Both the position numbers and the translations under genes were made by a program. A DNA stretch of 63,388 bases, filler included, from Lenisia limosa (Eukaryota; Protista; Breviatea): NCBI GenBank assembly GCA_001655205.1. It is 13 parts of 13 records of this genome, joined end to end, with 100 filler letters (N's around TTAATTAATTAA, not from the genome) between each part and the next. Parts side by side here need not be neighbours in the genome. Positions count along the whole stretch, not along the records: positions 49,223 to 54,870 come from LPNZ01009980.1; 12 more parts are not named here. One strand, written 5' to 3'. Positions 3,224 through 54,870 of the stretch are shown here, one piece after another (positions within the stretch are counted from its first letter, which is position 1; each line of letters starts with the position of its first letter). The notes beneath the pieces are model-generated. The model had not been told where the DNA came from. It searched no databases and saw only the letters and a program-made list of their open reading frames with translations.

Positions 3224-6200
3224 TTATCCACAATAACAGGCGTTGTTACACATAGTGAGTGATATACTGTACACTGAAGTAAGACAAGAAAAACATAGAA
3301 AAACCTAAATCAGAACCTAAAGGGTGAGAGAAGTTGGACCCGAACCATTTTCCCAAAACGCCAATATCAATAGCCAAACCCACTCTTTGCCATGGTCCAC
3401 GGAAATGTTATAGGAAGGCTTCACAAGGGTGGTCGCTAAGTCATATTGCCCTATTATGTCAGTTGGGCTTCTTCACAAAGGAAATAGTTTGTCTACCACT
3501 CCCATAAAAAAAAAAAAAAAAANNNNNNNNNNNNNNNNNNNNNNNNNNNNNNNNNNNNNNNNNNNNNNNNNNNNNNNNNNNNNNNNNNNATACAGCTGTC
3601 ATATCCATCATCAAATGAGGACATAATTCCACCCACCCGGGCCTGGCGTCGCGCTTGTTGACTGATGATGGAATCTTGAGGACTACATTGAGCGTAAGAA
3701 TGCTGTCAAATAGATAATCGTTTCAAAAATCGAATCACAATACAATCTTGTGCTACTTCCTCCTCCACCTTCTGATTGAACGCGTTGGTCCGTTTTGTCT
3801 GAAATAATCAGAAAATAAACCACTGAGTAAAAGTATCAACAGTTTGGGAGAATATTTAGAATCGAGAAATCCAACTAACTAAAGGTTTTGATACGTCATA
3901 GCTTCCTGGCGCTGGATCATCCGAATATTCTACTGCTAAAAAAAGTAAAACGACTTCACCTTGTCGTCTCGTAAGAAAGTACCCCCCCCCCCCNNNNNNN
4001 NNNNNNNNNNNNNNNNNNNNNNNNNNNNNNNNNNNNNNNNNNNNNNNNNNNNNNNNNNNNNNNNNNNNNNNNNNNNNNNNNNNNNNNNNNNGGCATTTGT
4101 TTTGGATTCCTCAGAGCCTTGAAGGTGTCACAAATGTACAGAAAATAGTGCCTGATAAAAAGAAGGTAAAGAGGCATTCCCACCTTTTCAGCCTCCAAAG
4201 AGTTATAATAACCTGGGGGTGGTGCGTCGCTCGTCTTGCTCAGTGTACGTTCTTCAGTGTAAAATGCAATCCAAATATCCTTAAAGAGTACAAAAGCTCA
4301 TAGAAACAATATCAATTGGAAGGAGCAAAGCAATCCTCTACTCCCAAAATAGATGTACAAGAATAGGAATAACAACACTCCAAACCAAACCAACCCGTTT
4401 TAGACTTAAATATTGATGAAGGTTTCGTAGGGTTGGCAGGCCGGCGACACGAGCGGCCAACCGATCGCTCAACTAAAGAAATAAACACACTTTGGAAAAG
4501 TCTTGCTGAAACTAATGTAGATCACAGTTCGAAGGCAACCTTTATTGGTATCCAATCGTTCAGGATCTTCTACTTCTAAAGCCTTCTTCATAGGTCGTGT
4601 CCTTAATGACTCGTGGGTTCCGGGCTACATAATAATTTGACTTTGCTGTATCAATGTTGATTTAAATAGTTTGCTTTTACCACTAACATCAGAGAACCTG
4701 CCAGTGGTGGAGCCGAAGGCGCCGAAGAGTTCACCTTGCCGATTAAGAACGGCCTGGGCTGTTGGGTCCGGTAAACTGTATGACCCTGGTCCTGGCGTGC
4801 TTCCTTTGATGTTTGATGATCTACTGTGGTAAGCCGCAAACTGGAGAGATCATAACAGTTTACACATGATACCAAACACCTACCGAGCAGAAGTGGAACC
4901 GAAGACAGCTCTTTTCCTTCCGATTTGCCGAGGTCCTGTGAACGCCGAGCTAACAGCATATGAACCTGGTCCCTTTGGGGTGAGATAGAAGAGAATGATA
5001 AGACTGCAATCCCACAATAGACAAAAACGTGCTGTAATTATCTCCCACTCCACAAAAAATGACACCCCAACCAACAGGGTTCGCGACACTTTGTGGTGCG
5101 TAGATGGAAGTGGGGTCAATATCACTTGTTCTGAAAGCGTAAAAGCCGTAATGTAAAGGCGAATAAGCAATCAAAAGCAATACGTACCTTCGTGATGTAG
5201 AACCGAAATGCTGCTTATGCAGGGGCTGCTGTGCTGAAGCGAAAGGATCGCGGGTATTGTACTCCCCAGGCCCGGGTACTGCGTCTCTTATCGCCTAGAT
5301 CGTTATCCGCTTGGTTGAAAAAATAGTATTAAGAACTAAATTATGAATCAAACAAAATAATGCCCAGGGAGGGTAACCAAGCAAAATAATGCCGAGGGAG
5401 GGCAACCAAACAAAATAATGCCGAGGGAGAGTAACCCAACAAAATAATGCCTTGGGAGGGCAAATAAACAAAATAGTGCCGAGGGAGGGCAACCAAACAA
5501 AATAATGCCGAGGGAGAGTAACCAAACAAAATAATGCCGAGGGAGGGCAACCAAACAAAATAATGCCGAGGGAGATAATAGTCTTCCATCTCCCCAATCC
5601 CACAGTTTCGGTAAATCTTGGAATACCACTTTGGAAGGAAGAGGAATGGCCCTTGCTGAATTTTTGTTTTCCACTCAGAATATCGGTTGCTAAGTTGTAC
5701 TCCCCCGGGGCTGGGTTATCCTCCTTCGGCTCAAATACCTGATGAAGTTATTGCGAATTTGAGGAAGGAAGGGTATTATTTGTTTGAGAGCAAAAGCTTA
5801 TCCTTCAAACACAAAGTTCACATAATCACAATATCATATGATACTTGAGAAAGGAAATATGCTGAAAGTGATATAAATCAAGGTAGCATCTGGCCAAAGC
5901 CATCCACACCATCTCACTTACATATCATAGTATTATATCATATTATATACTATATAAATGGATTATAGTAACTATAATCCATGAATACTTTTCTCTGAGT
6001 TTTTGACTTGGAGAACGCCGGAGCGGGTCCTGATGAAGCGGGACCAGTTTGACTGTAGTAAGCGGGTCCAAGCTGAAGGTGTATTAAGAGTATATAAAAA
6101 CAGAATACTTGAAGAATGACAAACATAATTCAAAAAAGAAGACAGGTATCAAAGAGAACCTTCAAACCACCAACCGTGTCATCTGTTGAAGGCGGGCGCT

Positions 6201-7078
6201 GTGGAACCACATTGCCGCCTATGTTGTTTATGTCACACTGAAACTACCCCGTACTCCTCCATTCATCCAACCACACGCACTCTGCTCATCATCGACATAA
6301 CCAAAAGTTTGATTGCCTCTCGGGATGCTTGGTGCCGACTTTGCCGTGGTCCATTCAACAGGTCTGCCGCCGATATCGCTGACTTTCGTGCGCGGCGTCC
6401 GCTGTTGTTTCGCGTTTTCTAGGGCGGTAACAGATTTATTCCTTTGATGAAAAAAAAAAAAGTTATCGGAAAGCGTAATGTATCTTTGTGAATGGGAATA
6501 TTGGGAAATGAGACGGCCTACTGCTTCCGATGCTCATGGCTTTTTGGGTTTCATATTGCCCAGGACCTGGGTTGTCTCCCTGTTTGCTTTTGAAGCGAGA
6601 TGTCTAATTTGTCAGTCTTGACTTTTGATAAAGCTATCTTTGAAATTCCTATCTTTCTCACCCGGGAAGAAATAGAAACGGGAACCTTTTTCGCAGGAGC
6701 AGTAGTAACATTATAGGACCCTGGCGCTAAAAAAGTCACTTTCCACAACAACTTTCATGCAAAGAGTAAGATGTGAAAGGGCACAAATCAGTAATAAAAG
6801 ATAATGCAGCATTCCATCAACAAACCAGGTCCAGACTCCGCTGCTTCAGCCTTGAACTCTCGAGGGGTCGTGGACATGAATGGGGCGTACCTACGATTGT
6901 CGTCAGCGGAACCGATTAATGGAATTCCACGAGGCTTATAAACAATAATGGTCCATTTGGCCTACCCGTGACCATGGGAGCGGTCTGTCGCAAGAGTGTA
7001 CGACCCTGGGCCCACTTCACTTCCAGTCGTTCCAAGGGGAAGAGTCAGATCTCTCTTGCCCCTGGATGTAAAAGCCAT
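3224..7078 (-). CDS. STPG2: STPG2-like sperm-tail PG-rich (SHIPPO) repeat protein, multi-exon; 3' end approximate
   Basis: Starts MAFTSRGKRDLTLPLGTTGSEVGPGSY, followed by YAPFMSTTPR. Later exons carry LAPGSYN, LGPAYY, PAPGEYN, VPGPGEYN, GPGSYA, TPGPGSYS, PAPGSYD and TPGP|GQYDLATTLVKPSYNI. The N-terminal VGPGSY...APF.S...R and C-terminal KP.(Y/F)N pattern resemble STPG2 as I recall it. Confidence 0.75.
5349..5578. repeat. Intronic 29-bp minisatellite, about 8 copies
   Basis: Unit aaacaaaataatgccgagggag(g/a)g(c/t)aacc is tandemly repeated inside an intron of the STPG2-like gene. Confidence 0.9.
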
Positions 7079-7419
7079 GTTGAGATATTTTTTTATGACG
7101 TTATAGGCGATAATAGCGCACTTAGAACAAAATTGGTTGGAAAAAAAGGATACTCTATTATGTACAATACCATCCCCATTCCACATTAATTAGGTTTGGC
7201 TGGATCTTGCCCCCTTTCCCCAGCTTTTCCTCCTCTCCCAGCTCTCTCTCTCCTCATTGTCCTCCATTATTAAATAAACGCACCTAGATTATTGCCGCCA
7301 ATTAGAGTAGTATCGTTTTGCCCCGAGACTTTATTCACCTGAGTTTCTTAGTTGTATCATCATGAAAGCACAATTCCTAGAATGGCTATTTGCTGCTATT
7401 ATCCCGGTTTTGCTCATTC

Positions 7420-49102: not shown

Positions 49103-49234
49103 TCTCAGCAAGGGACAGCTGCNNNNNNNNNNNNNNNNNNNNNNNNNNNNNNNNNNNNNNNNNNNNTTAATTAATTAANNNNNNNNNNNNNNNNNNNNNN
49201 NNNNNNNNNNNNNNNNNNNNNNCCCCCCCCCCCA

Positions 49235-49321
49235 AACCAATATTCTTCATCGAAAGTTTCTCTCCGTTTTACCAGTTGATGTGGTCTTTTTGTTTCATAA
49301 ATTTTCCAATTTACCCCCCAG
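49235..49321 (+). repeat. Family D intron 3'-end module before the NifS SHK exon
   Basis: ccaatattcttcatcgaaa...gttgatgtggtctttttgtttcataaattttccaatttaccccccag|GCCAAGCAC. Confidence 0.75.
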
Positions 49322-50939
49322 GCCAAGCACGCCGACTTCATCACGCTGAACTCGCACAAGGTCCACGGCCCGACCGGAGTGGGTTCCCTCTTCGCCCGCG
49401 ACCACAAATCCTTTGTTCCGCTCATTGACGGCGGTGGTGAGTGGCTGTGGCTTTGAATTGTTGCTATTGTTGTGTTGAATTGCTTTGCCAGATATATTCT
49501 GTTGTTATTACCNNNNNNNNNNNNNNNNNNNNNNNNNNNNNNNNNNNNNNNNNNNNNNNNNNNNNNNNNNNNNNNNNNNNNNNNNNNNNNNNNNNNNNNN
49601 NNNNNNNNNNNNNNNNNNNNNNNNNNNNNNNNNNNNNNNNNNNNNNNNNNNNNNNNNNNNNNNNNNNNNNNNNNNNNNNNNNNNNNNNNNGGTTGGCTTT
49701 GCCAAGGCAGCGCAGATGTCATTTGACTCCCTCGAAGCCAATGGTGGGCATGGGTGGACCCTGGAATGGTGGGCATGGGTAGAGCCTGTGGTGGGCATGG
49801 GCAGAGCCTGGGATGGTGGCATGGGCAGATCCTGGAATGGTTTGGGCAGTATCGCGTGGAAGACAGTTTATTTTAAGAGTCCGAGATTGGTCCTTATCTA
49901 CTTCTGATAGAGGGGGATGGTAAATATATTTTAGTGAAGTTGTATGTTGTTATTTTACCCCCCCCCCCCAGCTGTGAAGATGAGCAACATGATTCAGCAG
50001 CTCTACACTGGTTTCACTGCGTCTTNNNNNNNNNNNNNNNNNNNNNNNNNNNNNNNNNNNNNNNNNNNNNNNNNNNNNNNNNNNNNNNNNNNNNNNNNNN
50101 NNNNNNNNNNNNNNNNNNNNNNNNNNGGATTCATCTTTAAGCTAATTTGCTTTTTTCTTGTTTTTTTTTTGTTATTTTTTTGTTATTTTTTTTTTGTTTT
50201 TTCTTGGTAAGTTGCTTTTTTTTATATCAACACACTTTTTTTAAGAGCAAGAAAATAATAGTCTTGGGAAATACAAGGAAAACACCAGGAATACAACCTG
50301 ACAGTTCAGTTTGGCAAGGAGCGGCTTCCTTTCGTTCTCTCCGTCCGGTTCCCGGGAATGTCCTCTGAAAAGGCCGTGCATTTCCTGTCATCAATGGGTG
50401 GGCTTTTGGTTCTGATTCAAGCCGCACTTTCTCAAAAGATTGTTCATCAACGAGCCTCCTGCCCCACGGATTGATTTTGGGTTTTTTGTTGTCGCATTAA
50501 TTTCGCATTCTCATTACATTCACGACAATATTCTTTATTGAAATTACCTCCCTTTTACCCCCCCCCCCCCNNNNNNNNNNNNNNNNNNNNNNNNNNNNNN
50601 NNNNNNNNNNNNNNNNNNNNNNNNNNNNNNNNNNNAACCCTCACATGTGCTCATGGCGCTTGGAATGTGGGAGAGGGGGGGATGATAAGACCTGAAATTG
50701 CATGAGGGTGTAAATCTACAGTGGGGCTTGAGTGATCCTTTAGGACGAAGGAAGAAGCGTTGGAGGGAGTGAGGTTTACTGTGTCATCTCTGACGACTGA
50801 ACAGGATATCCTCCAGGTGGGTGGATTCTGAGTTGGAAAACCGTTGTAGGGTTAATCAACTCGTCAAAATATCTGGGTCTTTTTTCAGACAGTGTGACTA
50901 CTTCGTTTATATGTAATCCAGGTTGAGAACAGTTTCTGA
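49322..50939 (+). CDS. nifS: Group I cysteine desulfurase (NifS/IscS-type), C-terminal half; 5' part lost at scaffold end
   Basis: Exons ADFITLNSHKVHGPTGVGSLF...VPLIDGG (PLP SHK motif), VGFAKAA, RLPFVLSVRFPG, PSHVLMALG and EGVRFTVSSLTTEQDI. The catalytic SxGSAC exon probably lies in an N gap. Confidence 0.8.
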
Positions 50940-51313
50940 CCTTTCAGGGTATTGACTGTGTGTCGCGTCTGATGAGGGATAGGAAGGCACCGAAGGAGCA
51001 GAAGGCGAACAAGTATTGGTAGACTGTTATTGTGTTGTATGGTATTTCTTGATGGATTTCGTTGATTCTGAGCGATTTGGAGAGACTGTTTTTATTCTGT
51101 ATTTCTTCAAGCCTTAATGAACAGGTGCGGAAATTCCTGAGGCGATACTGGTAAAATATCGATAATTTTCGAGGATTTATCGAAATATTCATCCTTTTTT
51201 TGAACCCAAGTGAACCCATAGTAGTATTAGAAGGAAGCACTGCGCCATTTGTAGAGTGCATGAGAATGTTATATTAAACGAGAGCAGCCAATGCCTTCGT
51301 TGACATGGGGGGC

Positions 51314-54300
51314 TTAGATGGACATGAAGTACTCAGGGTGGTGACGGGCGATGTGCCAGAGGAACTCGTCTGCCTGCTTCTCGTTGTTGGCGTAGGCCAC
51401 AACGGTGCTGTAGATGTTGTCTTGCTTGGTCTGGGGGGAGGGGGGTAAATGGGGAAATTTAAGAAAAAGCCCAAAATCTGGTGGAAGTGAGAGGAAACTA
51501 TGTTTCTATGAGGTCTTCTCGCATAATCGAGCACAAAGTCATTCATTAAAAACCAACCTGGTCCTCAACCAGCTCGACAATGGGGCGGAGAAGGGAGTTC
51601 TGCTTGATCATGCCAGGAACCTTCCACAGCGTCTTCTTCCACTCCTCGTAGCCCTGAGGATGTAATGTGTGCTATTTTGAACAACAATTTGCACCAGAAT
51701 TACAGTAAAATCTATTTCACGACAGAAATTACTCATGATAATGTTCTTCAAATCATGCAACACATTTTTCACCCACATTGGTGTTGAGGTTGTCGCCTCC
51801 GACACTCTGAGTGACGTTGAAGCTGTGAGCCTCGAAATCTCCGTCAACCTNNNNNNNNNNNNNNNNNNNNNNNNNNNNNNNNNNNNNNNNNNNNNNNNNN
51901 NNNNNNNNNNNNNNNNNNNNNNNNNNNNNNNNNNNNNNNNNNNNNNNNNNNNNNNNNNNNNNNNNNNNNNNNNNNNNNNNNNNNNNNNNNNNNNNNNNNN
52001 CAAGCACCTCTCTCTCGCACCTTCTCGGTGTGCTTCGAGCGGCCGACGTCGATGCCGATGCCGATCTCGCACCAGGTAACAGACAGACTGTACTGCTTGG
52101 AGACCCATTTCTGACGGGTCAATGGAAATGCAAATGAATTAAATCTTCGATTGCTTCTAATAACAACAATAACCAAACACTAACATTATCTCTCACATAG
52201 CATTACACTCATCCCCGCACCTCGTCATGGCGTGTCACAAGGTCCTGGTCGAAGACGGATGTGATGTTAAGGAAGCCGCCGAGACGGGTGGTGGCCCAGT
52301 AGTGAGTGCCGACCATCTGGACAAACTGACTGTGGGGGTGAGGGGTGTCAAAAAAGCGCTTATCACAAGCAAACACACAAACAACTCAATACCGACAAGT
52401 CCTAACACAGCACAACGCCAGAAGAGCCCCTCACAGGTATTGGGCACGGTCGCGGTCGGTGGCGATGGTGGCCGGAAGACGGTCAACGATGGCCTGGATG
52501 CGGCGGCCGAGGGGGTTGGCAGGGTACACGGAGAGCTCAATGAGGGGGAGGGAGCGCTTCTCAACGCTGAAGAAGTGTGTGTTGTTGTGGAGGTAGCCGT
52601 GAGTCTCGCCCTTGGTCTCCTTGAAGCCAACTCCAACCTATAGCGTCAACAGGGCATTAGATACGATATGCTAACACTTTCATGGATGCTAATTTGATCT
52701 CTCTTTCATTTAATATGGTCAACTCTGTAATTCACCCCCCCCCCACTCTGACGCCGTCGTACTCGACATGGGCGTTGATGCCGAAGCTCTTCTCCACGGT
52801 CTCGATGTAGGACTCCCACTTCTTGACAAGGGTCATTTCCTGGAGGGTGATGGACGGTCGCGGCACGGTGGCTCATAGCAGGCAAAATACAAAACAAAGG
52901 GAGATTCTCGACAAATACTGATAATTCACAAGTCTTTAGAGACGAAAGCGAAGCCGAACTCTCTATAATAAACCCGGGCTCACGGTTTCAATAGTGCCGT
53001 CGGGAGTTTCGTTGAGGAAGAGTTCGTCAGGAACCTGGGGTGGTGAGGGCTGTTTTGCGGGTCCGGAAGCTACTATTCAGTTTTATCTGAAAGGGAGTTT
53101 CACCGTAGCCTACCTTGTAAGTGACACCGTCGTAGGGGGAGGTGTAGGTTTGTTCGTAGTCGTAGTGCCAGTCGAAGAGGGGCATGGTCATGTGCTCCTG
53201 AGGGTGTGAAGTCACTACTCACGAGAGTACGAAGAAGATCAAGCAAAGGTGCGAAATATCATGGAATCTTGTCAAGATATTCAACGTTCACGACCAGGCC
53301 GCCTCAAACCTTCATGAAGTCGAAGCCACGGGCAATGCCGGTGTTAAGACCTGAACAGTTAAAACCATGTTGCAGCTTCAGCAATGGAACACAGCAAAAC
53401 CATGTTGCAGCTTCAGCAATGGAACACAGCAAAACCATGTTGCAGCTTCAGCAATGGAACACAGCAAAACCATGTGGACACAAGAACACCGCCCTACCCT
53501 TAACAGGGGGGTAATCCATGACCGTCTTGGCGGGAACATTGTTGGCGGCCTGGGTGTTGATGTACTGAACAACAGCCTTCTTGAAGCTGGCTGCCTTTTG
53601 CTGGAGAGGTCAGAGATGTCAGCCGATGAGAAAAAAAGAGTAAACACGTAAGAGTTATCGCTCGAACCTGATCGGTGATCATTTCGTAGAAGGGCACCAT
53701 GGTGGTCTTAGTGGGGATCATGCCGGGCTGCTTGGCAAGGCTAAGGGGTTAATGTAAGTATTTTGGCTGTTTTCATAAGTAAAAGCTAATATCAAGTAGA
53801 AAGCTAAGAAAGTAGAAGCTAAGTGTTACCCCTCACCTGCCGAGCCAGTGATTGTAAGTGCCGTTAACAAGGTTGTTGCCTCCAATGTACTCAGTGAGGG
53901 TGCGGGCATGCTCGGCAAAGTCCTTGTCAACCTTGTCGGTGTGCGACTGGTGTATCAGGGGGATTTTGGAAGTATGTTACATTCATAACGGTCACATTGA
54001 TGAAGGATATCTACCACACCGCCAATCATTACGTTGATGAACTAAATATCACATGAAGCCCCCCCCCCCACCTTGCGTCCGACGTCAATGCCAAGGTCAA
54101 TCTCCTTCCAGGTCAGGTCAAGGTTGATGTTGGTCTCAACCCAGTCCTCAGAGTGGCGCGAGGTCAGGTCTTGGTCAAAGGCGGTGCTGTGATGTGAGAG
54201 GGGTGAGAGCCTTTCATTATGATATCCAGTTCAACAACATTAAAAGCCCGGTCTTAGCGCACGTGATGTTGACGAAGCCTCCGAATTGGGCGGCAGAGAT

Positions 54301-54870
54301 GTAGTGCGTACCAATGCGCTGGATGAAGAGCCTGGGGGGGGGGGGAGNNNNNNNNNNNNNNNNNNNNNNNNNNNNNNNNNNNNNNNNNNNNNNNNNNNNN
54401 NNNNNNNNNNNNNNNNNNNNNNNNNNNNNNNNNNNNNNNNNNNNGGCGTAAAGGTAAAAATCACGAACCGAAAAATCTGAAACTCCAAACAAAAAACAAG
54501 CAGTTCTTTGAAATGACCGAAGAAACGTTCCCACATGATAAGCATGTTACCCTCCCTACTGGTATTGGTGCATGTCGGCGTCAGAGGCGATGGTTGCGGG
54601 TAGACGGTCAATGAGGCCCTTGAGCTGGGGGTTCATGTCGAAGGCAAAGACGTCAAGCTGCATACATGGTCAGATGAAAGTCCGATAGGGCCAAAAAGTG
54701 AATTTTGATGATGTACCGCCATAATACAACAGCGAGAATATCAACAAGGGAATGTAGAGCGGGTAGTTAGGCCCCCACCTGGAAGATGCTGATTGCTCTG
54801 GTCTCCATGGAGAGGAAGCGGGTGCTGTTGTGCATGAGCTCGTCGACATGCTTGTGAGTGCGCTTGAAGG
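51314..54870 (-). CDS. Protein with two tandem MACPF (perforin-like) domains, 5'-truncated
   Basis: Two signatures: LFIQRIGTHYISAAQFGGF (GTHY at 54301-54312) and FVQMVGTHYWATTRLGGF (52299-52310). Both have the G-(T/S)-H-(F/Y)-X6-G-G core, lacking the usual preceding Y/W. Flanking motifs are shared (DRLPATIA, NIT..FDQDL.TRH.E.WV, W.EI..GIDVGR, VD.DF..H, PGMI). Stop TAA at 51314-51316. Confidence 0.85.
53366..53475. repeat. 36-bp tandem repeat, 3 copies, in an intron of the MACPF gene
   Basis: Unit aaaaccatgttgcagcttcagcaatggaacacagca. Confidence 0.9.

What the first reader, a model, noticed from the sequence alone, without database searches (positions are those of the whole stretch)
51314..54870. 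Perforin-like protein with two MACPF domains in tandem
Seen: hand-splicing gives one reading with two homologous halves, each carrying the MACPF core (IGTHYISAAQFGG and VGTHYWATTRLGG) and shared flanking motifs. A linker (...VQYINTQAANNVPAKTVMDYPPVKGLNTGIARGFDFMK...) begins the second domain. The protein ends about 40 aa after the second domain with no obvious targeting domain, and the N-terminus is cut off, so more domains are possible. Known: most MACPF proteins have one domain and oligomerise into pores. I recall multi-MACPF proteins being reported in piroplasmid apicomplexans, but they are rare. Inference: this is a covalently linked pore-forming dimer, possibly used for prey lysis or host damage.
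Basis: partly seen in the sequence, partly recalled or inferred. Interest (0 to 1): 0.75.

Follow-up and report, generated by a model that had tools for sequence, protein, structure and literature searches.

The report
Two linked perforin-like domains, one gene
The 3' part of an intron-rich gene from an unidentified microbial eukaryote most likely encodes one protein with two old, diverged perforin-like (MACPF) domains joined by about 15 residues; this layout is rare but has been predicted before, and no transcript confirms it here.

Summary
On the minus strand, 17 exons (54868 to 51314) are joined by 16 GT-AG introns and keep one reading frame to a stop codon. Exons A1-A7 align in order with exons B5-B10: 40.7% identity over 214 residue pairs, score 407 against 9.9±5.6 for shuffles.

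**MACPF evidence.** Each half carries G-T-H-Y-x6-G-G (2 sites, 0 expected by chance). Pfam gives only MACPF for these exons, at the same profile positions, but each exon scores below threshold (E about 0.007). A strongly beta-amphipathic stretch follows each signature, where the second membrane-inserting hairpin should lie.

**Gaps.** Both N gaps are intronic.
- An independent gap-free ENA contig (L001) fills 51851-52000 with a 155-nt intron.
- 54348-54444 is intronic by the paralogue argument only.

**One gene or two.** The A7/B1 junction is a 147-nt intron holding a perfect 35-bp repeat. Its GC3 is 0.38, against 0.79 in exons. I favour one polypeptide (about 0.8).

**Limits.** No relatives were found anywhere, and the organism is unknown. 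The 5' end could not be extended.

**Verdict.** This is an independent, cysteine-poor tandem-MACPF variant with no C-terminal accessory domain. Interest is moderate.

The parts
54779..54868 (-). Exon A1, cut by the piece edge; aligns with residues 5-34 of exon B5
   Evidence: GC3 0.87
54560..54657 (-). Exon A2, the helix segment before the signature (D-R-L-P-A-T-I-A shared with B5); ends in phase 2
   Evidence: a stop codon follows the donor at once
54348..54444 (.). Assembly gap inside intron A2/A3 (54559-54332)
   Evidence: Same intron position and phase as B5/B6, and no residue missing against half B. Not read directly.
54263..54331 (-). Exon A3 with MACPF signature 1 (G-T-H-Y-x6-G-G at 54312-54278)
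   Evidence: Pfam MACPF E=0.0069, 17.0 bits, profile 71-89
54072..54186 (-). Exon A4, a beta-amphipathic stretch at the position expected for membrane-inserting hairpin TMH2 of half A
   Evidence: beta-moment 2.50, 99.9th percentile of the null; aligns with B6 tail and B7
53837..53946 (-). Exon A5, return strand of the TMH2-like region; continuous across the point where half B has intron B7/B8
53668..53740 (-). Exon A6, C-terminal conserved MACPF segment (P-G-M-I shared with B9)
53498..53600 (-). Exon A7: end of domain A (about 20 residues aligning with B10), then a linker of about 14 residues; ends in phase 1
53351..53497 (-). Intron A7/B1 (gtaggg...ttcag) holding a perfect 35-bp x 3.3 tandem repeat (53361-53475) and an in-frame ATG ORF from 53438
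   Evidence: 100% matches; GC3 of that ORF is 0.38 and of the A7 read-through 0.47, against 0.79 in exons; the independent contig L001 ends inside the repeat
53310..53350 (-). Exon B1, start of domain B (G-x-G-F-D type start)
   Evidence: GC3 0.77. That this motif starts MACPF domains is from my own knowledge.
52747..53197 (-). Exons B2 (53197-53114), B3 (53034-52984) and B4 (52839-52747): the TMH1-side region of domain B. The B3/B4 junction is uncertain.
   Evidence: beta-moment 2.17 in B4. An alternative donor at 52973 with an acceptor at 52872 adds 14 codons with GC3 0.91.
52435..52637 (-). Exon B5, 67 codons, the longest exon; strand plus helix segment before the signature
   Evidence: used for all homology searches
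52221..52329 (-). Exon B6 with MACPF signature 2 (52310-52276)
   Evidence: Pfam MACPF E=0.0073, 16.9 bits, profile 70-104
52021..52110 (-). Exon B7, a beta-amphipathic stretch at the TMH2 position of half B
   Evidence: beta-moment 2.34, 99.8th percentile
51851..52000 (.). Assembly gap inside intron B7/B8
   Evidence: L001 8138-8270 supplies 133 real bases. The intron is 155 nt, GT...CAG, with a G21 run, T runs and a C run, a stop 7 codons after the donor, and a length that is not a multiple of 3.
51777..51848 (-). Exon B8, return strand of the TMH2-like region
51558..51653 (-). Exon B9, C-terminal conserved MACPF segment
   Evidence: Pfam MACPF E=0.25, 11.9 bits, profile 172-199, in the same order as B6
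51314..51430 (-). Exon B10: end of domain B, a tail of about 16 residues, and the stop at 51316-51314

Best explanation
This is the 3' portion of one spliced gene of an intron-rich eukaryote. Its product carries at least two complete-looking MACPF (perforin-type) domains in tandem, joined by a linker of about 14-15 residues, and it ends about 16 residues after the second domain. The duplication is old: about 41% amino-acid identity, almost no DNA identity, and only 2 shared intron positions. Both copies keep the G-T-H-Y-x6-G-G signature, the helix segment before it, a strongly beta-amphipathic stretch after it and the C-terminal conserved segment. Inferred mechanism: the protein enters membranes as MACPF proteins do. 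It would oligomerise through the edges of the central sheet, and its helical clusters would unfurl into beta-hairpins. Each polypeptide would contribute two adjacent, non-identical subunits to the ring. That makes it a covalent counterpart of the C8 alpha/beta pair and would halve the number of chains needed. Shown: gene structure, homology of the halves, the MACPF motifs and the intronic nature of gap 2. Inferred: a single transcript, the fold, secretion and pore formation.
For: 16 GT-AG introns with closed phases and one stop. Halves 40.7% identical over 214 pairs, score 407 against 9.9±5.6 (per exon). The signature occurs twice with 0 expected. Pfam's only credible hits for the exons are MACPF: A3 at E=0.0069, B6 at E=0.0073 at the same profile positions, and B9 at E=0.25 further along the profile. 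A profile of A3/A4/B6 against PDB returns only complement C9 and C8 beta, aligned at their signatures (E 1.3-2, not significant alone). The highest beta-amphipathic moments fall in A4 and B7, just after each signature, and in B4. For one polypeptide: the A7 donor and B1 acceptor fit the gene's other splice sites and keep the frame through 10 more exons. The sequence between them is a perfect 35-bp minisatellite (35 is not a multiple of 3) with non-coding GC3 of 0.38-0.47 against 0.79. That leaves no room for a terminator, a promoter and a signal-peptide exon. Gap 2 was read as an intron in the independent contig L001.
Against: No transcript evidence, and no homologue from any other organism to test whether the fusion is conserved. 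No single exon reaches Pfam's gathering score of 21.5 bits. Whole-domain scoring and structure prediction were not done. An in-frame ATG ORF (53438 onward) with a hydrophobic start lies just upstream of B1 and could in principle start a second gene. The N-terminus, and so any signal peptide, is missing. With 1 Cys in 532 residues the protein is unlike the disulfide-rich secreted MACPF proteins of animals and apicomplexans. Gap 1 was not read. The B3/B4 junction is ambiguous.
Confidence: 0.6

Rival explanations
1. These are two separate, head-to-tail duplicated MACPF genes. Gene A would end by read-through of the A7 donor to the stop at about 53451. Gene B would start at the ATG at 53438, whose hydrophobic first 20 residues would serve as a signal peptide, or at a trans-splice acceptor before B1.
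For: An in-frame 44-codon ATG ORF runs into B1. A7 read-through meets a stop after 16 codons. Tandem duplicates are common, and each unit is a whole MACPF domain plus a tail of about 15 residues.
Against: The stop of A and the ATG of B would be about 10 bases apart. The supposed signal peptide is encoded by a perfect 35-bp x 3.3 repeat, in which only one of four repeat ATGs is in frame. GC3 there is 0.38 against 0.79 in all real exons. The donor gtaggg and acceptor ttcag match the gene's other sites.
Confidence: 0.12
2. It is one polypeptide, but not a lytic pore former. The MACPF folds would be re-used for a non-lytic role, as in astrotactins, Torso-like or plant CAD1-type proteins. Alternatively, one of the two domains would be only a binding or scaffold module that replaces the missing accessory domain.
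For: There is no C-terminal membrane-targeting domain. The first signature position is I or V instead of Y or W. The protein is cysteine-poor. Non-lytic MACPF proteins are well documented (review PMC5483515, listed; not read in detail).
Against: Both halves keep alternating hydrophobic and polar stretches exactly where TMH2 lies, at the 99.8-99.9th percentile. Both keep the two glycines of the signature.
Confidence: 0.25
3. It is an artefact or a dead gene: a false duplication made by the assembler, or a decaying pseudogene.
For: The scaffold is short and full of gaps. The organism appears in only one other assembly.
Against: The halves share almost no DNA identity (best 78% over 72 nt), so this is no assembly duplicate. 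An independent contig is 100% identical over the B half. There are no frame breaks in 537 codons, and GC3 is uniformly high in every exon.
Confidence: 0.03

Closest known systems
MACPF / perforin superfamily (Pfam PF01823)
   Same: It has the G-T-H-[FY]-x6-G-G signature. From my own knowledge of MACPF sequences, a Y lies seven residues upstream of the signature and the domain starts with G-x-G-[FY]-D. An amphipathic segment follows the signature, and there is a C-terminal conserved segment. Pfam and PDB hits point only to this family.
   Different: It is very divergent: each exon scores below threshold, and the first signature position is I or V. Exon B5 has no relative among 1.84 billion representative proteins. 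It has almost no cysteines and no accessory domain after the MACPF units.
Multi-MACPF perforin-like proteins of piroplasmids (Theileria annulata TA18285, Babesia bovis BBOV_III000410; three predicted MACPF domains, PMC7522308)
   Same: More than one MACPF domain is predicted in one polypeptide. The same idea has been proposed there, that fewer chains would be needed per pore.
   Different: Apicomplexan PLPs have a C-terminal APC-beta domain and two conserved cysteine pairs in the MACPF domain. Here the protein stops about 16 residues after domain B and has 1 Cys in all. No sequence relationship beyond the superfamily was detectable. This looks like an independent origin of the tandem layout.
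Complement C8 alpha / C8 beta heterodimer
   Same: Two different MACPF domains are packed side by side and act as one unit, one docking and one inserting (PMC3021121). This is the best functional analogy for two diverged MACPF units held together.
   Different: In C8 the two domains are separate chains held non-covalently, flanked by TSP1, LDLRA and EGF modules, and they need C5b-7 and C9. Here the link is a short peptide, and no flanking modules are seen in the part available.

Membership tests
MACPF (PF01823) | Signature [YW]-G-[TS]-H-[FY]-x6-G-G | tested here: met
   G-T-H-Y-x6-G-G occurs in both halves (54312-54278 and 52310-52276); 2 hits against 0 in 100 shuffles. The first position is I or V, not Y or W.
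MACPF (PF01823) | Pfam HMM score above the gathering threshold (21.5 bits) | tested here: inconclusive
   Only single exons could be scored: A3 17.0, B6 16.9 and B9 11.9 bits, all MACPF and in profile order. A simple sum for half B (28.8) would pass, but the joined model was not scored.
MACPF (PF01823) | Two clusters (TMH1, TMH2) able to form amphipathic beta-hairpins on either side of the signature region | tested here: inconclusive
   Beta-amphipathic moments at the 99.5-99.9th percentile fall in B4 (before the signature) and in A4 and B7 (after it). This is a sequence pattern only. The TMH1 region of half A lies outside the piece.
MACPF (PF01823) | Fold: a bent, twisted four-stranded beta-sheet flanked by the helical clusters | not tested
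MACPF (PF01823) | Oligomeric pore formation in membranes | not testable with these tools
   Needs protein and membranes.
Multi-MACPF proteins | Two or more MACPF domains on one polypeptide | tested here: inconclusive
   A frame-preserving GT-AG intron joins the units, and the sequence between them looks non-coding. No transcript or orthologue confirms it.
Apicomplexan perforin-like proteins (ApiPLP) | C-terminal APC-beta domain | tested here: not met
   The stop comes about 16 residues after the end of domain B.
Apicomplexan perforin-like proteins (ApiPLP) | Two conserved cysteine pairs in the MACPF domain (PMC7522308) | tested here: not met
   0 Cys in the 216 residues of half A and 1 Cys in the 316 residues of half B.
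Secreted pore-forming toxin or effector | N-terminal signal peptide | not testable with these tools
   The 5' end lies beyond the piece edge at 54870. The only other contig of this organism (L001) ends at about 53450 and does not reach it.

The most novel reading that the evidence does not exclude
An unsampled eukaryotic lineage independently fused two anciently diverged MACPF domains into a minimal, cysteine-free, accessory-domain-free protomer. One domain has taken over membrane recognition or ring initiation and the other does the insertion. This would be a single-chain equivalent of the C8 alpha/beta division of labour, forming pores from half the usual number of chains.
Probability: 0.2. 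Interest if true: 0.65.

Novelty: new variant of a known kind. Interest (0 to 1): 0.42.

Why it matters
Nearly all studied MACPF proteins are single-domain subunits that must find each other on a membrane. Tandem versions have only been predicted, in piroplasmids, and never characterised. A second, unrelated example would be a natural test of two things: how neighbouring subunits in a MACPF ring can be tethered, and whether the two positions can specialise. This one has two clearly intact but 59% diverged domains, a very short linker and no other module in the available part. It also shows that deeply divergent MACPF lineages still sit in poorly sampled microbial eukaryotes. The practical limits are severe: the organism is unknown, the gene is truncated and no expression data exist.

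Tried and rejected
**Homology searches**
- phmmer of exon B5 against 1.84 billion representatives gave three hits. All are low-complexity repeat proteins with no MACPF domain, so they are artefacts.
- The word-indexed protein search with B5 gave nothing within its length limits.
- Scans with B5 of JGI metagenomes, prokaryotic genomes and viral contigs gave no confirmed relative.
- Degenerate DNA patterns for G-T-H-Y-x6-G-G-F-x-N-I(-T) gave 0 hits in metagenomes and prokaryotic genomes.
- PDB searches with B5, B6 and the profiles A3 and A4 gave nothing relevant.

**Extending the gene 5'**
- Exact look-ups of 20 ATG ORFs found two spurious antisense ORFs.
- Those led to contig L001, which fills gap 2 but stops in the 35-bp repeat.
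- A further search with the ORF at 53367-53648 found nothing.

**Other dead ends**
- A literature search for the ENA accession found nothing.

**Left out as instructed.** Nothing that needs the joined exon model was done: whole-domain Pfam scoring, full-length homology search, AlphaFold prediction and fold search. The only read-through used X at every exon junction, inside a script.

**Considered and rejected**
- A coding exon hidden in either gap.
- A recent or assembly-made duplication.
- Membership of the apicomplexan PLP family.
Full report
**Scope and constraints.** Only 49223-54870 is genome. The gene of interest lies on the minus strand. Steps that need the joined model were left out: whole-domain Pfam scoring, full-length homology search, structure prediction and fold search. 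Where a read-through was needed for a statistic, X was placed at every exon junction inside a script.

**Gene structure.** Three-frame translation of the minus strand and a coordinate check give 17 exons:
- A1 54868-54779 (cut by the piece edge)
- A2 54657-54560
- A3 54331-54263
- A4 54186-54072
- A5 53946-53837
- A6 53740-53668
- A7 53600-53498
- B1 53350-53310
- B2 53197-53114
- B3 53034-52984
- B4 52839-52747
- B5 52637-52435
- B6 52329-52221
- B7 52110-52021
- B8 51848-51777
- B9 51653-51558
- B10 51430-51314

All 16 introns are GT-AG, 67-228 nt long, mostly with a gtg/gta-ggg type donor and a C-rich tract before the acceptor. Phases close over 537 codons to a single stop. Exons have GC3 0.79 (range 0.53-0.87) and introns are 33-52% GC. 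This independently marks the chosen frames as coding.

**The gaps (tested first).**
- *How the second contig was found.* An exact look-up of spurious ORFs found two of them in the protein collection. That led to an independent, gap-free contig, L001 (ENA ERZ3820729 NODE_1754, 9721 bp). It is 100% identical to the piece apart from one single-base indel.
- *Gap 51851-52000.* L001 supplies 133 real bases for this gap. The B7/B8 intron is 155 nt, runs from GT to CAG, and contains a G21 run, T runs and a C run. It has a stop seven codons after the donor, and its length is not a multiple of three. This gap is intronic, and that is settled.
- *Gap 54348-54444.* No second assembly covers this gap. A stop codon follows the A2 donor at once. 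The A2/A3 intron sits at the same position and phase as B5/B6. The alignment with half B shows no missing residue, and the Y-x6-[IV]-G-T-H-Y spacing is the same in both halves across the junction. So it is intronic by inference.

**Two homologous halves.** Exons A1-A7 align in order with B5-B10. Per-exon BLASTP E-values run from 3e-9 to 4e-4, with 33-73% identity. Overall, 87 of 214 aligned pairs are identical (40.7%), with score 407 against 9.9±5.6 for shuffles. At the DNA level almost nothing is left (best 78% over 72 nt). Only two of the intron positions are shared (A2/A3 = B5/B6 and A6/A7 = B9/B10). The duplication is therefore old and is not an assembly artefact. Exons B1-B4 have no counterpart in the piece, because the corresponding part of half A lies beyond 54870.

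**Is it MACPF?**
- The DNA pattern for G-T-H-Y-x6-G-G occurs twice, both on the minus strand in A3 and B6, with none in 100 shuffles.
- Pfam scanned exon by exon returns MACPF for A3 (E=0.0069, 17.0 bits, profile 71-89), B6 (E=0.0073, 16.9 bits, profile 70-104) and B9 (E=0.25, 11.9 bits, profile 172-199). The only other families returned for these exons were two weak, unrelated hits (E 0.12-0.17). No single exon reaches the 21.5-bit threshold.
- A profile of A3/A4/B6 against PDB sequences returns only complement C9 and C8 beta, aligned at their own signatures, with E 1.3-2.
- The strongest beta-amphipathic windows in the protein lie in A4 and B7, directly after each signature, where TMH2 lies in MACPF proteins, and in B4.
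- From my own knowledge of the family, B1 (G-x-G-F-D) looks like the usual start of a MACPF domain. The W...P-G-M-I...P segment in A5/A6 and B9 looks like the conserved C-terminal helix region.

Taken together, the superfamily assignment is sound for both halves, although formal whole-domain scores and the fold were not obtained.

**One protein or two genes?** Domain A ends about 20 residues into A7. About 14 more residues follow, then a phase-1 donor (gtaggg), a 147-nt interval and an acceptor (ttcag) before B1. The split codon reads Gly, and the frame then holds through ten more exons. The interval is a perfect 35-bp x 3.3 minisatellite, and the independent contig breaks inside it.

An in-frame ATG ORF from 53438 with a hydrophobic start is the only candidate for a second gene start. 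Three points count against it:
- It is encoded by that repeat, and only one of the four repeat ATGs is in frame.
- Its GC3 is 0.38, and the A7 read-through has 0.47, against 0.79 for exons.
- It would leave about 10 bases between the genes.

I put one polypeptide at about 0.8. Only transcripts can settle it.

**What it is not.** It lacks the APC-beta C-terminal domain and the cysteine pairs that mark apicomplexan PLPs (PMC7522308). The protein stops about 16 residues after domain B and has one cysteine in 532 residues. No relative of exon B5 was found in 1.84 billion representative proteins, JGI metagenomes, prokaryotic genomes or viral contigs. That also means neither an annotated product nor a transcript-derived ORF of this gene is in those collections.

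**Likely mechanism (inferred).** This would be a MACPF-type membrane-inserting protein in which each chain supplies two adjacent, non-identical subunits. The closest functional analogy is the side-by-side C8 alpha/beta MACPF pair (PMC3021121). The closest architectural precedent is the set of predicted three-MACPF proteins of Theileria and Babesia, for which fewer chains per pore has been suggested. No accessory domain is visible, so either the missing N-terminal part or one of the two MACPF units must provide targeting. Whether the target is prey, host or self cannot be said, because the organism is unknown.

**Uncertainties in the model.** The B3/B4 junction has a second frame-preserving splice pair (donor 52973, acceptor 52872) that adds 14 codons with coding-like GC3 of 0.91. 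B3 has the lowest GC3 (0.53). The copy number of the 35-bp repeat is not certain.

**Verdict.** This is a new, independently arisen variant of a known kind, of moderate interest, limited by truncation and by the lack of expression data or relatives.

Noticed in passing
window 49301-51019 (+); L001 about 3800-7300: The neighbouring gene runs convergently and is a NifS-like cysteine desulfurase in many short exons. One exon hits Pfam Aminotran_5 at E=1.6e-6. Its stop at about 51019 lies roughly 300 bases from the stop of the MACPF gene.
   Followed up: partly
window gaps 49513-49690, 50026-50126, 50571-50635, 51851-52000; L001 5963-6060, 6396-6431, 6876-6922, 8138-8270: The independent contig fills four of the five gaps in the piece. 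All four N runs overestimate the real length (178, 101, 65 and 150 N against 98, 36, 47 and 133 bases). The one gap I read holds long G, T and C homopolymers, which probably broke the assembly.
   Followed up: partly
window 51431-54778, intron 3' ends; also L001 1-6100: Many introns of this organism end in a run of C just before the AG. In wrong-frame ORFs this shows up as PPPP. It is an unusual form of polypyrimidine tract and may help place the organism.
   Followed up: no
window 53361-53475: A perfect 35-bp tandem repeat, 3.3 copies, lies in the intron between the two MACPF units. Contig L001 ends inside it, so the copy number is uncertain.
   Followed up: yes
window 49740-49841: An imperfect 25-bp tandem repeat (about 4 copies, 85% matches) lies in an intron of the NifS-like gene.
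   Followed up: no
window 52682-52879 (probably the C run at 52733-52745): The two assemblies differ by a single-base indel, probably in a poly-C run of intron B4/B5. It changes the length of a spurious plus-strand ORF (42 against 65 residues) but touches no exon.
   Followed up: partly
window 52840-52983: An alternative splice pair for B3/B4 adds 14 codons with coding-like GC3 of 0.91. This may be an annotation ambiguity or real alternative splicing in the TMH1-side region.
   Followed up: partly
L001 (ENA ERZ3820729 NODE_1754): In a collection of about 15 billion proteins, ORFs of this locus occur on one contig of one ENA assembly only. The organism is barely sampled. No paper in the library cites the accession.
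   Followed up: partly
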